A stretch of 64,000 nucleotides of DNA from Macrostomum lignano. Taxonomy: Eukaryota. The position numbers were made by a program, and so were the translations under genes. Within the stretch, counting starts at the first letter, position 1. Each line of letters starts with the position of its first letter. The stretch covers positions 992,001-1,056,000 of the forward strand of contig NIVC01000032.1 of NCBI GenBank assembly GCA_002269645.1, in the 5' to 3' direction. Of the stretch, positions 22,923 to 26,219 are shown one piece after another. Under the pieces are notes generated by a model that saw nothing but the letters and a program-made list of their open reading frames with translations, had not been told where the DNA came from and did no database searches.

Positions 22923-23899
22923 GACTCTTTATATATTTACACTTTGTTTACCAGTGTGTGGTCAATTTCTGTGCAAAATTTAATCTTGAGAAAAGGCGAT
23001 AAGATATAATATTCCCGGAAAGCATATACTGTATGAAATATTCAGTAATTTTTTCACTTACACTTGATCAAGCCTCTTTAAGTAACTCTGCAAGTCTCAT
23101 GTTTCGTCAATGTCGCCGTCCGCTGTTAGGAAATTCAAAAAAAACATATTTCCTCTTGATCCTTTTCCCTGCGATCTGCGGAAAACCCATGCAGGGCCAA
23201 TTCTTATCTCTGTATTCTACAATATTAGGAATGGAGCTAAGCAGCCACTTCAAAAGACTCTATCAGCCTTGTGAGCTTCCCAAGGGGATACTGCGCGGCT
23301 CCTTTACGGCCTGAGAAAGCAGCCTATACAAGGATCGAGGCTACTGGTTTTTTTCCCAGCATTTTTTCTCGGAATTGCATTTCTACAAGGTTGACGACTT
23401 TTTGTATTAGCTGCCGAAAGACAGAACTTTCTGTATCTACATACTTGCAAGTATGTCTTCCAACTGCAGAGCATCCATACATGCATGTTACGAAGCATTG
23501 GAAATTAATTGAATTAATTAATTAATTAAAATGCATGCAATTTAGTAGCCTCTATATTAATTTGCTGTATTCTTCGAAAAACAAATTTTGTGTGTCTATA
23601 CATATTGCTGAAGTTTGACGCCGGCCGTAGTGTACGTGCATGTTGAAATGCTAATTGGCGTTAGCTGGTAGTTAATTACATTTATAGTTAATTCTAAATT
23701 ATACCTACATGAATAATATAGGTAAAATTTTGAAAAATCGGCTAATTTCGATAAAAGTCTGCTTTTTGGCAAGGTGCTTTATAGATTTGAATGAATAGCA
23801 AAATTACCTTGTTGAATTATCAGTTACATGTAACTTATATCTTTAGACTACGGAAAGCTGTGACTTAATGTTGTTGTTGGTAGTTTAATATCTCATGAA

Positions 23900-24204
23900 G
23901 GGGCTGTAGCCTAGTGGTCAGAGCGTCGAACTCACGACTGAAAGGTCAGGGGTTCGATTCTCGACCCACTCGGAACTAATTGTGTCCTTGAGCAAGACAC
24001 TTAACTCTGTATTGCTTCAGTTCACCCAGCTTTAAAATGGATGCCATCTTTAGCTGGGGTAATTGAGGGTGTGCGTGGCGACTGTCAGTCCTTAGACTGA
24101 ACAGCCTTCAGATGTGCCGCACAATAGCTGCGGCTGAGCTGTCGGTTGCACATCTGGCCATTGAGGCAGGTGTAATCAATTATTGTTATTATTATCATTA
24201 TTAT
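23900..24204 (+). mobile_element. tRNA-derived CORE-type SINE, full-length copy
   Basis: A box tagcctagtgg, B box ggttcgattc, MIR/CORE-like tgtgtccttgagcaagacacttaactc...cttcagttcacccagctttaaaatgg, (TTA)n-like tail; second copy at 36441. Confidence 0.85.
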
Positions 24205-24637
24205 ACCGGTAGATATCCATGCACTCTGTGAGGTCTTATGTTACGCCAATACGTGATTGATTAGGCCGACTTATTTTCATCATTCCGGGCATCCGGATAC
24301 AGCAGGGAGGCGTTGACGCCCATTCCGCTAACCCCTGGCAACCACAGGCAGCTGATTGACGCAGTGTGGTTAGCGTGGTTCCCCCTCCGTAGAGTCCAGG
24401 AGGTGGATGGTCGCTCGCCCGGTAGCCCTTAGGTAGTGGACGAGCTGGCAGAGGTTCTCGGGCCTGAAAACGTCGGTGGGCCGAGAGGTACGTAGGTGAT
24501 TGAGTACGTGCGAACTTGTTTGCAACTCTGGAAGTTACACGTACATGTACTCTGTGCCTTGGTTACGCCAGAATTGGACGCGTTACCCACTGAGCTACTC
24601 TCCGGATTTAGTAGGTACAAGAGCATTTTACTAACAG

Positions 24638-24953
24638 GTCCATGCGAACTCAACAGCCAAGCGTCTACGTGTCTGGCATCTACGAATTGGGAGCACGCAC
24701 CCAGCAGATTGTCAAGCTGGCTTCAAAACCGGCATCAACATCTCATCGCCACCGGATGCTGCGCGACGGCCTCTTGCTAGCGCCGCCGTCGGTCTCCAGG
24801 GTCGGTCGAGTCCGCGGCCGTGGCATCTATTGTGCCGACGTCTTTGCCAAGAGCGCCGCCTACTGTCGACGCGAAGCTGCTGGCGGCGTTCGCGGACGGG
24901 ACAATCAGCTGTTTGCGCTGCTAGCGGAGGTGGACACCACGGACGCTCATGAG
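24638..24953 (+). CDS. PARP-family catalytic domain, exon A (...MLRDGLLLAPPSVSRVGRVRGRGIYCADVFAKSAAYC...FALLAEV...)
   Basis: Acceptor ttactaacag (24637); GLLLAPP and GRGIYCADVFAKSAAYC align with PARP1 GLRIAPP and GKGIYFADMVSKSANYC. Donor either AG|gtccgt (24954, intact frame) or AG|gtagga (25001, needs a 1-nt frameshift). Confidence 0.75.
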
Positions 24954-25361
24954 GTCCGTCGGGCAGTCTGATGGACGTCGAGACTGGAGACGAGGTCGAG
25001 GTAGGATTAGCTGGTTGATTGGTCTCAAGGAATTGTGTTCCCAGGAAGTTCTTTAAGCAAGTCTTCTAGGAAAGTGTCTTCAGGGAGTGTCTTAGGAAAG
25101 TGATCTAAATAAGCGTCTCAAGGTATTGTTTTAAGAACTTAGGACGTGTCCTAGGAAGTGTTTCAAGAACTAGGAGCTTTATTGAGAAGAGTCTTAGGAA
25201 AGTGCTTTATGAAGTTTCTTTTAAACCCTCCTATTAAGGAGGTGTCGCAGAAAAAAACGTAAAAAGTGTTTTTTTGAAAGACGTACGGTCGTAAAAACTA
25301 GACAATATATTGGTCTACATTTATATTCGTATATCGATCCAGCATCCATCAAGGCACTCGA

Positions 25362-25678
25362 TCTAGGCACACGATCTAGGCATCGATCTAGACGCACGAT
25401 TTAGGCATCGATCTAGGCACACGATCTAGGCATCGATCTAGGCATCGATCTAGGCATCGATCTAGGCATCGATCTAAGCATCGATCTAGGCACACGATTT
25501 AGGCACACGATCTAGACACATGATCTAGGCACACGATTTAGGCACACGATCTAGACACATGATCTAGGCACACGATTTAGGCACACGATCTAGGCACACG
25601 ACCTAGGCACACGATTTAGGCACACGATCTAGACACATGATCTAGGCACACGATTTAGGCACACGATCTAGGCACATT
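25362..25678. repeat. 12-13-bp minisatellite (gatctaggcacac / gatctaggcatc)n in the PARP intron
   Basis: Directly visible. Confidence 0.93.
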
Positions 25679-25760
25679 TTCATTTGTAAGTTTTCTGTTT
25701 TTAGTATGGATCGAAAAAGCTGTACTACTTGAAGTTTTATTTATTACTTCATACGCGAAG

Positions 25761-26219
25761 GACCCCGACGAAGACGACCAGACCGACGGTGAAAACGAGA
25801 ACCGGCCGGTTGTAAAGGTCGTTGGCCGACAGTCGCCATCAGCAGACGGCGACGTTCAACTGCTGCTCCAGCAGCTCCCAAAGTCCGGCACTGGTGACAA
25901 AGTTGCAGTTGTCGTTCCTCTTGGCGACCTTGGCCGACCAACTCCGCCGTGGGTTCGGCGGTATCGTCGAGGCGCTTTCAGCGGCTGCACCGATTGGCAT
26001 TCGCGCTATTCGGAGTATGTCGTGTCCGACGAATCTCGAATCCGCCTGCGCTATCTGGTGAGGTTTGCGTTCTGGCTGACAGATTCGGAAGATCTGGACG
26101 ATGATGAATTGGAAGCTGCGGACAAAGACATGGGAGATCCGGAGGGCCAGCAAGATGTGAAGAATGATAATGATGAGGAAGAAGATGAAGATGAGGATGC
26201 TGACGATGAAGAAGACTAA
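25761..26219 (+). CDS. PARP-family catalytic domain, last exon (VVKVVGRQSP...VVPLG...YSEYVVSDESRIRLRYLVRF plus acidic tail)
   Basis: Frame open from 25707 to TAA at 26219; YSEYVVSDESRIRLRYLV aligns with PARP1 YNEYIVYDIAQVNLKYLL. The ORF track shows only 26022 onward. Acceptor uncertain (25760 or 25704). Confidence 0.75.
   Translation, partial: DPDEDDQTDGENENRPVVKVVGRQSPSADGDVQLLLQQLPKSGTGDKVAVVVPLGDLGRPTPPWVRRYRRGAFSGCTDWHSRYSEYVVSDESRIRLRYLVRFAFWLTDSEDLDDDELEAADKDMGDPEGQQDVKNDNDEEEDEDEDADDEED

What the first reader, a model, noticed from the sequence alone, without database searches (positions are those of the whole stretch)
23411..26219. Divergent PARP catalytic domain lacking the NAD+-binding His-Gly motif but keeping Tyr and the catalytic Glu, with an acidic tail
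Seen: GRGIYCADVFAKSAAYC, LLAEV, VPLG and YSEYVV...LRYLV match the PARP1-type signature. No CAYGGN codon pair exists in any frame at 24638-24760; the position equivalent to PARP1 H862 is Lys (ASKPAS). The domain ends in a ~45-aa Asp/Glu tail. An intact frame is possible using a weak donor at 24954; the stronger donor at 25001 needs one extra G in the GGG at 24961-24963. A 40-nt candidate upstream exon (23411-23450; xAERQNFLYLHTCK) has good splice sites and the right phase. No WGR, BRCT or zinc-finger exons were found. Established: PARP activity uses the H-Y-E triad. Inference: a pseudo-enzyme, an altered-specificity ART or PAR reader, or a young pseudogene.
Basis: partly seen in the sequence, partly recalled or inferred. 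Interest (0 to 1): 0.7.

Follow-up and report, generated by a model that had tools for sequence, protein, structure and literature searches.

The report
Degenerate PARP-like gene in a flatworm
An unannotated two-exon stretch of the Macrostomum lignano (free-living flatworm) genome encodes a very divergent PARP-type ADP-ribosyltransferase fold that has lost the His-Gly pair that anchors NAD+, so it is either an enzyme-dead PARP relative or a gene that died very recently; it is a modest curiosity, not a new kind of system.

Summary
Two + strand ORFs (24615-24968 and 25659-26216) carry a real PARP catalytic-domain match: Pfam PF00644, 59 bits, E 5e-16. An AlphaFold model matches the PARP2/PARP1 ART fold (Foldseek E 6e-14). 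GIYCAD, KSAAYC, LLAEV, VPLG and SEYVV...LRYLV are all present. The family's near-invariant LLWHGS reads LASKPA (His to Lys, Gly to Pro). No CAYGGN exists on the + strand in 20000-24937.

The window is M. lignano contig NIVC01000032.1, positions 992001-1056000. No annotated protein anywhere resembles this locus; the best real hit among 1.84 billion representatives scores 46 bits.

Both ORFs are open in the homologous frame (chance about 2e-5) and have in-frame codon usage. Lost conserved residues cluster on the His-Gly strand (p = 0.006). So it evolved as a coding, non-canonical PARP fold for a long time.

Against a live gene:
- No helical, WGR, BRCT or zinc-finger exons in 64 kb.
- Stops sit directly upstream.
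- The only in-frame donors are weak.
- The 40-nt upstream exon adds no homology.

Verdict: a catalytically degenerate PARP-derived gene (0.45) or its fresh pseudogene (0.40). RNA-seq and the copies on the two duplicate contigs would decide. Interest 0.3.

The parts
24615..24953 (+). PARP-like exon A (113 codons as modelled). The stop-to-stop ORF is 24615-24968. Significant PARP homology runs from about 24756 (MLRDGLLLAPP...GRGIYCADVFAKSAAYC...LLAEV).
   Evidence: codon-usage score is positive only in this frame
24726..24731 (+). Codons AAA CCG (Lys-Pro) in the columns where 98% of aligned PARPs have His-Gly.
   Evidence: no CAYGGN upstream
24828..24830 (+). Tyr of GIYCAD, the second residue of the H-Y-E triad; retained.
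24954..25000 (+). Stretch between the weak in-frame donor (GTCCGT at 24954) and the stronger out-of-frame donor (GTAGGA at 25001). The PARP frame hits TGA at 24969-71. The other frame reads an acidic peptide (DVETGDEVE) like the start of exon B. Either intron, or exon carrying a 1-base indel (real or an assembly error).
   Evidence: genuine M. lignano donors in the same window are GTGATT, GTAAAG and GTGAGT
25348..25676 (.). 13-bp minisatellite inside the putative intron.
25761..26219 (+). PARP-like exon B with the stop TAA at 26217-19. Acceptor is gcgaag|G, phase 0. It encodes the acidic loop, VVKVVGRQSP, VVVPLG, YSEYVV, LRYLV and the tail. The stop-to-stop ORF is 25659-26216.
   Evidence: it is the 4th most coding-like ORF of the window; an AAG|G acceptor is used by the PRPSAP gene
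26013..26015 (+). Glu of SEYVV, the third residue of the H-Y-E triad; retained.
26076..26216 (+). C-terminal 47-aa Asp/Glu-rich tail.
23411..23450 (+). Its splice sites look good, but it has no homology support and is not needed for the PARP match.
23896..24180 (.). Interspersed repeat upstream of exon A. A 79%-identical copy lies at 36441-36712, and further copies lie in the duplicate loci L002 and L003. No tRNA or Rfam match.
24200..24614 (.). GC-rich unclassified block ending in TAG TAG (24609-24614), directly against the first homologous codon. No copy was found in the window or in the two duplicate loci.

Best explanation
This is a lineage-specific, very divergent descendant of a PARP1/2/3-type (clade 1-like) catalytic domain in Macrostomum lignano. 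It encodes only the C-terminal roughly two-thirds of the ART fold, plus an acidic loop and a 47-aa acidic tail.

The strand that carries the NAD+-anchoring His-Gly has been rewritten to Lys-Pro. Seven of its eight conserved columns are lost. The rest of the fold core (GxGIYxAD, KSxxYC, LLxEV, VPxG, SEY, LRYL) is kept.

Shown: homology, predicted fold, loss of His-Gly, intact reading frames and coding-like composition. Inferred: it cannot bind nicotinamide in the canonical way, so it is not a poly- or mono-ADP-ribosyl transferase. It was kept by selection as a non-catalytic ART-fold module (a pseudo-enzyme) at least until very recently. If it is still expressed, it would act by binding rather than catalysis, and the acidic tail suggests basic partners. 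Whether it is transcribed today is not known.
For: Homology and fold:
- Pfam PARP, 59 bits, E 5e-16.
- PDB sequence hits are only PARP1 and PARP2.
- AF2 model has pLDDT 74 and pTM 0.75, with strand/helix elements where the His-Gly strand and its helix should be.
- Foldseek top 50 are all PARP2/PARP1 ART domains, E 6e-14, TM 0.64.

Not a recent copy:
- The best genuine hit among 1.84 billion representatives is 46 bits, E 2e-7. The top hits are scattered over an annelid, a diatom and a nemertean.
- The word-index search found nothing.

Coding signals despite that divergence:
- Both ORFs are open in the homologous frame. Composition-matched shuffles stay open with p = 0.022 and 0.00085.
- Codon-usage log-odds are positive only in the PARP frame: +16 and +20 against -4 to -31.
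- Exon B ranks 4th of all ORFs in the window.

Conservation pattern:
- 27 of 47 columns that are at least 80% conserved are kept, against about 26% overall identity.
- Losses cluster on the His-Gly strand: 7 of 8 lost there against 12 of 38 elsewhere, Fisher p = 0.0055.
- His-Gly to Lys-Pro needs at least 4 base changes, so it is not a single lesion.

Gene structure:
- Phase-0 donor and phase-0 acceptor give a loop length like the family's (28 against 27 residues).
- The AAG|G acceptor type is used by a real gene in this window.
Against: - No protein from this locus, or from any duplicate copy of it, is in GenBank's RNA-based M. lignano annotation or in UniRef. This is weak evidence, because that annotation dropped transcripts that overlap repeats (PMC5730564).
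- The first third or so of the ART domain, the helical domain and the WGR domain are absent from 64 kb in six frames.
- Two stop codons sit directly before the first homologous codon.
- The only in-frame donors (GTCCGT, GTGGAC) are unlike the real donors seen here. The good donor needs a frameshift.
- No AATAAA lies within 390 nt of the stop.
- The AF2 model was guided by a PARP alignment, so the fold match is partly circular.
Confidence: 0.45

Rival explanations
1. It is a young pseudogene or gene relic. A once-functional divergent PARP-like gene has recently been disabled. It lost its 5' exons to insertions and picked up a 1-base frameshift before its true donor at 25001. It is no longer expressed as a protein.
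For: - Unannotated in two gene sets.
- TAG TAG directly upstream of the homology, next to inserted or unclassified DNA and an interspersed repeat.
- No N-terminal ART, helical or WGR exons in 64 kb.
- The strong donor GTAGGA is out of frame by one base, and the 47 nt before it read as an acidic peptide in the other frame, matching the start of exon B.
- It lies in a stretch of at least 36 kb that is minisatellite-rich and has no recognised or coding-like gene.
Against: - There is no stop or frameshift inside the roughly 800 nt of homologous coding sequence, which limits neutral decay to about 1-2% divergence (inference).
- The duplicate copies of this region differ by 5-12%, so death would have to be much more recent than the duplication.
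- Codon bias is intact.
- The frameshift could be a homopolymer error of the assembly.
Confidence: 0.4
2. It is an active ADP-ribosyltransferase with an unusual NAD+ site. Lys would replace His as the ribose or phosphate contact, while Tyr and the catalytic Glu work as usual.
For: Tyr, Ser-x-x-Tyr and Glu are retained, and the fold is predicted.
Against: - Gly to Pro removes the backbone NH that hydrogen-bonds the nicotinamide carboxamide in all PARP-ligand structures (established knowledge).
- The whole strand and the following conserved Asn and Ile are lost.
- The N-terminal part of the domain is missing.
- The one clade-1 precedent with His replaced and Glu kept is plant PARP3 (PMC2964712). 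A paper title reports it inactive in Arabidopsis (PMC6701155, seen but not read).
Confidence: 0.07
3. It is the 3' end of a complete, canonical PARP gene. The exons carrying His-Gly and the regulatory domains would lie outside the window or be mis-assembled.
For: M. lignano introns can be long and full of repeats. An AG|ATT phase-0 acceptor at 24707/24708 coincides with the 9-residue gap in the alignment.
Against: - The Lys-Pro strand is downstream of that acceptor, contiguous and in frame with the conserved helix. An upstream exon could therefore not supply His-Gly at the right place.
- No PARP exon appears in the 24.6 kb upstream.
- No annotated M. lignano PARP shares this 3' end.
Confidence: 0.05
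4. The resemblance to PARP is chance similarity in GC-rich ORFs.
For: None beyond the low overall identity of about 26%.
Against: - Pfam E 5e-16.
- 96 of 96 PARP queries hit exon A, and over 80 alignments (E up to 5) fall on exon B, in order and on one strand.
- Profile hits have E 2e-16 and 5e-8 and cover consecutive profile positions 396-458 and 460-537.
Confidence: 0.01

Closest known systems
Human PARP1 / PARP2 catalytic (ART) domain, Pfam PF00644
   Same: These are the best sequence matches among solved structures and the best structural matches. Shared motifs are GLxxAPP, GxGIYxAD, KSxxYC, LLxEV, VPxG and xEYxV...LRYL, including the Tyr and the catalytic Glu.
   Different: His-Gly is replaced by Lys-Pro. 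There is a deletion of about 9 residues before that strand. The N-terminal third of the domain, the helical (PRD) domain and the WGR domain were not found. An acidic loop and a 47-aa acidic tail are added. Identity is only about 22-30%.
Land-plant clade-1D PARPs (plant PARP3; C-V-E triad)
   Same: The only described clade-1 PARPs with the triad His replaced while the Glu is kept (PMC2964712). A paper title reports Arabidopsis PARP3 as inactive (PMC6701155; not read).
   Different: The plant proteins keep WGR, PRD and ART domains, are expressed and are conserved across land plants. They have Cys rather than Lys and also lose the Tyr. The flatworm locus is an orphan with no detectable orthologue.
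Catalytically inactive animal PARPs (PARP9 Q-Y-T; PARP13/ZAP)
   Same: PARP-fold proteins that have lost NAD+-site residues and act without catalysis. The PARP9 triad and its inactivity are in PMC2964712. PARP13 is from my own knowledge.
   Different: They belong to clade 3, carry macro or zinc-finger/WWE domains, and have lost the Glu. The flatworm sequence is clade-1-like and keeps the Glu.
Large spiralian PARPs (Capitella teleta X1Z9Z7; Tubulanus polymorphus XP_074658150.1, 'tankyrase-like')
   Same: These are the best animal hits (46 bits). They share GLLIAPP and FAKSAAYC with the flatworm GLLLAPP and FAKSAAYC.
   Different: They keep LLFHGS or LLWHGS. The Tubulanus protein is a long multidomain protein (2412 aa), while the Capitella entry is a 208-aa fragment. 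The E-value of only about 2e-7 cannot show orthology.

Membership tests
PARP catalytic domain (Pfam PF00644 / ARTD fold) | Sequence match above the curated threshold | tested here: met
   59.1-59.2 bits against a cut-off of 26.7, E 5e-16
PARP catalytic domain (Pfam PF00644 / ARTD fold) | Full-length domain (profile positions 1-199) | tested here: not met
   Only profile positions 60-199 align. The local profile aligns only from ORF residue 48. No further exon was found in 64 kb.
PARP catalytic domain (Pfam PF00644 / ARTD fold) | ART three-dimensional fold | tested here: met
   AF2 pLDDT 74, pTM 0.75. Foldseek finds PARP2/PARP1 at E 6e-14, TM 0.64. This is a model built from a PARP alignment, not an experimental structure.
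Active H-Y-E PARPs | Triad His followed by Gly (the nicotinamide anchor) | tested here: not met
   Lys-Pro sits in the His-Gly columns. No CAYGGN on the + strand in 20000-24937.
Active H-Y-E PARPs | Triad Tyr, and the Ser/Tyr of KSxxY | tested here: met
   GIYCAD and KSAAYC are present
Active H-Y-E PARPs | Catalytic Glu | tested here: met
   SEYVV, codon 26013-26015
Active H-Y-E PARPs | NAD+ binding and ADP-ribosyl transfer | not testable with these tools
   Needs recombinant protein and an assay
Clade 1 PARPs (PARP1/2/3 type) | WGR and helical (PRD) domains upstream of the catalytic domain | tested here: not met
   No Pfam domain in + strand frames of 20250-24860. No tblastn hit and no profile hit for positions 1-395 anywhere in the window.
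PARP-fold pseudo-enzymes | Loss of NAD+-site residues with the fold core retained | tested here: met
   7 of 8 conserved columns are lost on the His-Gly strand against 12 of 38 elsewhere, p = 0.0055
PARP-fold pseudo-enzymes | Expressed and under purifying selection | tested here: inconclusive
   Open frames (p about 2e-5 jointly) and in-frame codon bias argue for past selection. There is no annotation, no RNA data, and the duplicate copies are out of reach.
Pseudogene | Disabling lesions (stops, frameshifts) in the homologous frame | tested here: inconclusive
   None inside the aligned exons. Stops flank ORF A at 24609-14 and 24969-71, and the best donor is out of frame by one base.
Pseudogene | A recognisable, closely similar parent gene | tested here: not met
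   The best genuine hit in 1.84 billion representatives is 46 bits. Nothing was found through the word index.

The most novel reading that the evidence does not exclude
A live, flatworm-specific, stand-alone PARP-fold pseudo-enzyme with a K-P/Y/E site in place of H-G/Y/E, no regulatory domains and a polyacidic tail. It would be expressed (possibly SL-trans-spliced at the acceptor just before the ATG at 24642) and would act as a non-catalytic binder or decoy, for example for basic chromatin proteins or for partners of the real PARPs. No orthologue is detectable in any other sequenced organism.
Probability: 0.3. Interest if true: 0.45.

Novelty: new variant of a known kind. Interest (0 to 1): 0.3.

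Why it matters
If expressed, this would add an animal clade-1-type example to the short list of PARP-fold proteins that gave up NAD+ binding but kept the fold. It would show which parts of the ART fold can be selected for non-catalytic use. It would sit in a regeneration model organism where RNAi and transgenesis are available.

If it is a pseudogene, it only illustrates gene turnover in a repeat-rich, recently duplicated genome. Either way it flags a coding-like locus missing from the public M. lignano annotation.

Tried and rejected
- Word-index protein search with the spliced model: no hit.
- Exhaustive phmmer: the two top hits (P0001, P0007) are translated tandem repeats matching 17 residues many times over, so they are spurious.
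- Search for upstream PARP exons with Pfam on three frames of 20250-24860, tblastn with 96 PARP proteins and a 543-position WGR/helical/ART profile on all six frames: nothing.
- A weak minus-strand tblastn hit at 20922-21047 lacks every motif on inspection, so it is noise.
- A second 'LLEV' strand read from 25716-25760 is supported by only 6 of 84 alignments and adds about 4 score units, so I treat it as chance.
- A tRNA origin for the elements upstream of exon A: ARAGORN and Rfam are both negative.
- Reaching the duplicate copies of the locus through the three PRPSAP copies: the 10-kb flanks stop 3.1 kb (L003) and 5.2 kb (L002) short.
- A SAM-domain reading of the ORFs at 33237-34777: no Pfam hit.
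- Looking for a hidden His-Gly strand in the other two frames of 24700-24760: none found.
- Literature search for Macrostomum PARPs: nothing relevant.
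Full report
**Origin of the window.** The 282-aa minus-strand ORF at 42827-43675 is 100% identical to GenBank protein BOX15_Mlig001204g2 of Macrostomum lignano. The contig that encodes it, GCA_002269645.1 NIVC01000032.1, contains window 29394-53657 exactly. The window is therefore positions 992001-1056000 of that contig, on the + strand. 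It is very rich in minisatellites, with 53 Tandem Repeats Finder rows. The only recognised genes are a PRPSAP-like gene (39397-43657, minus strand) and a copine gene.

**The observation.**
- On the + strand, one frame of 24615-24968 reads VQEHFTNRSMRTQQPSVYVSGIYELGARTQQIVKLASKPASTSHRHRMLRDGLLLAPPSVSRVGRVRGRGIYCADVFAKSAAYCRRE...LFALLAEVDTTDAHEVRRAV*.
- One frame of 25659-26216 reads ...DPDEDDQTDGENENRPVVKVVGRQSP...AVVVPLG...YSEYVVSDESRIRLRYLVRFAFW, followed by a 47-aa Asp/Glu-rich tail and TAA.
- Joined at GAG|GTCCGT (24953/24954) and gcgaag|G (25760/25761), both phase 0, the product passes Pfam PARP PF00644 at 59 bits (cut-off 26.7), E 5.6e-16.
- Its only matches among solved structures are PARP1 and PARP2, at E about 2e-8.
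- Ninety-six PARP proteins hit exon A by tblastn, and over 80 alignments (E up to 5) fall on exon B. Nothing else in the 64 kb is hit on either strand.
- A profile built from 31 long PARP homologues hits the two ORFs at consecutive profile positions 396-458 and 460-537, with E 2e-16 and 5e-8.

The resemblance is real.

**The NAD+ site.**
- In two MAFFT alignments (45 and 47 homologues) the family's LLWHGS block aligns with LASKPA. His, present in 98% of homologues, becomes Lys. Gly, also 98%, becomes Pro.
- CAYGGN occurs only at 24938 and 26129 on the + strand of 20000-26300. Both are out of frame and downstream, so no exon in the 4.6 kb upstream could supply His-Gly.
- Tyr (GIYCAD), Lys-Ser-x-x-Tyr and Glu (SEY) are retained.
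- Of 47 columns that are at least 80% conserved, 27 are kept. Seven of the eight between LLWHGS and the following Asn and Ile are lost, against 12 of 38 elsewhere (Fisher p = 0.0055).
- Caveat: Pfam, the local profile and 82 of 96 tblastn alignments begin only after this strand. 'Lys at the H862 position' therefore depends on the ungapped 10-residue register to the conserved GLxxAPP helix. The absence of His-Gly does not depend on it.
- By established PARP structural knowledge, the Gly backbone NH and carbonyl hold the nicotinamide carboxamide. A Pro there removes the NH. I infer that canonical NAD+ binding is lost.

**Fold.** AlphaFold2 with the 48-sequence alignment gave pLDDT 74 and pTM 0.75. 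It placed a strand at IVKLASK and a helix after it. Foldseek returned only PARP2/PARP1 ART domains in the top 50, with E 6e-14 and TM about 0.64. The alignment guided the model, so this is supporting evidence, not independent proof.

**Relatives.**
- The word-index search found nothing.
- The exhaustive phmmer search of 1.84 billion representatives gave 98 hits. The two best are translated tandem repeats and are spurious.
- The best genuine hit is 46 bits, E 2e-7.
- The top genuine hits come from an annelid, a diatom, a nemertean and an alveolate.
- So there is no orthologue, no parent gene and no annotated product of a duplicate copy in any public protein set, including GenBank's and UniRef's M. 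lignano proteins.

**Is it coding?**
- Composition-matched shuffles leave the two frames open with p = 0.022 (118 codons) and 0.00085 (152 codons).
- Codon-usage log-odds, trained on the PRPSAP and copine exons of this window, are +16 and +20 in the PARP frame and negative in all five other frames.
- Exon B is the fourth most coding-like ORF of the window, behind three of the four training exons.
- A sequence only about 26% identical to every relative cannot have reached that divergence neutrally and still kept these frames. For most of its history it was a selected coding sequence.

**Gene structure and doubts.**
- Real donors in this window are GTGATT, GTAAAG and GTGAGT. Real acceptors include caag|G.
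- The in-frame PARP donors are GTCCGT (24954) and GTGGAC (24930), both poor.
- GTAGGA at 25001 is better but is one base out of frame. The 47 nt before it read as an acidic peptide in that other frame, like the start of exon B.
- That fits either a real 1-base lesion or a homopolymer error in this long-read assembly.
- The loop length with the 24953 donor (28 residues) matches the family (27).
TAG TAG at 24609-14 then stops it, against a 400-bp unclassified block.
- An interspersed repeat lies at 23896-24180.
- An in-frame ATG at 24642 follows the 24637 acceptor.
- A phase-0 CAG|ATT at 24707/24708 coincides with the 9-residue alignment gap.
- No helical, WGR, BRCT or zinc-finger sequence exists in the window.
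- No AATAAA lies within 390 nt of the stop.

**Annotation.** The GenBank annotation of this assembly derives from RNA-seq. It was filtered to remove non-coding transcripts and transcripts that overlap repeats (PMC5730564). Absence of this locus is therefore only weak evidence of silence, because its intron holds a minisatellite and its 5' flank holds repeats.

**Duplicate copies.** The assembly holds three copies of the PRPSAP region, and the flanks I could fetch are 88-96% identical. The loci fetched stop 3.1 kb and 5.2 kb short of where the PARP-like exons should be. The dN/dS test could not be run.

**Comparison with known cases.** Within the PARP1 clade, only land-plant clade-1D proteins are described as having replaced the triad His (by Cys) while keeping the Glu (PMC2964712). 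A paper title reports Arabidopsis PARP3 as inactive. PARP9 (Q-Y-T) is inactive. The flatworm sequence fails two membership tests for active H-Y-E PARPs: no His-Gly, and no full-length domain or regulatory domains. It passes those for the PARP fold.

**Verdict.** It is best described as a degenerate PARP-fold coding sequence. It is either a live pseudo-enzyme (0.45) or a very young pseudogene (0.40). An active unusual ART (0.07) and a canonical gene with missing exons (0.05) are unlikely. Novelty is a new variant of a known kind. Interest is 0.3.

Noticed in passing
window 1-64000: The window is M. lignano contig NIVC01000032.1:992001-1056000. A large share of it is minisatellite arrays with periods of 4-141 bp, some over 4 kb long (for example 7879-12235 and 51142-54517). 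They generate many long spurious ORFs.
   Followed up: partly
window 23896-24180 and 36441-36712; L002 20935-21238; L003 17487-17789: An interspersed repeat of about 290 bp, with copies 79-83% identical. By eye it starts like a tRNA, but ARAGORN and Rfam do not support that.
   Followed up: partly
window 29271-39400 versus L002 (NIVC01000056.1) and L003 (NIVC01001341.1): Three duplicate copies of the PRPSAP region exist in the assembly. Their flanks are 88-96% identical, and the tandem-repeat arrays differ in length between copies.
   Followed up: partly
window 33189-33677 and 34208-34777 (+): Two non-repeat ORFs of 147 and 186 aa. They lie in sequence about 93% identical between the three copies, are not annotated and have no Pfam hit. 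Their coding status is unknown.
   Followed up: partly
window 26160-26216; proteins P0001 and P0007: The top database hits to residues 186-202 of the query (RRGAFSGCTDWHSRY) are proteins made of translated tandem repeats from other genomes. I judge this a chance match multiplied by repetition.
   Followed up: yes
window 39397-43657 (-): The annotated PRPSAP protein (P0099) is marked 'partial' and starts at PPSQRS. The genomic ORF has an upstream in-frame ATG (MSDSSTPPSQRS, 43675), so the true start is probably six codons earlier.
   Followed up: no
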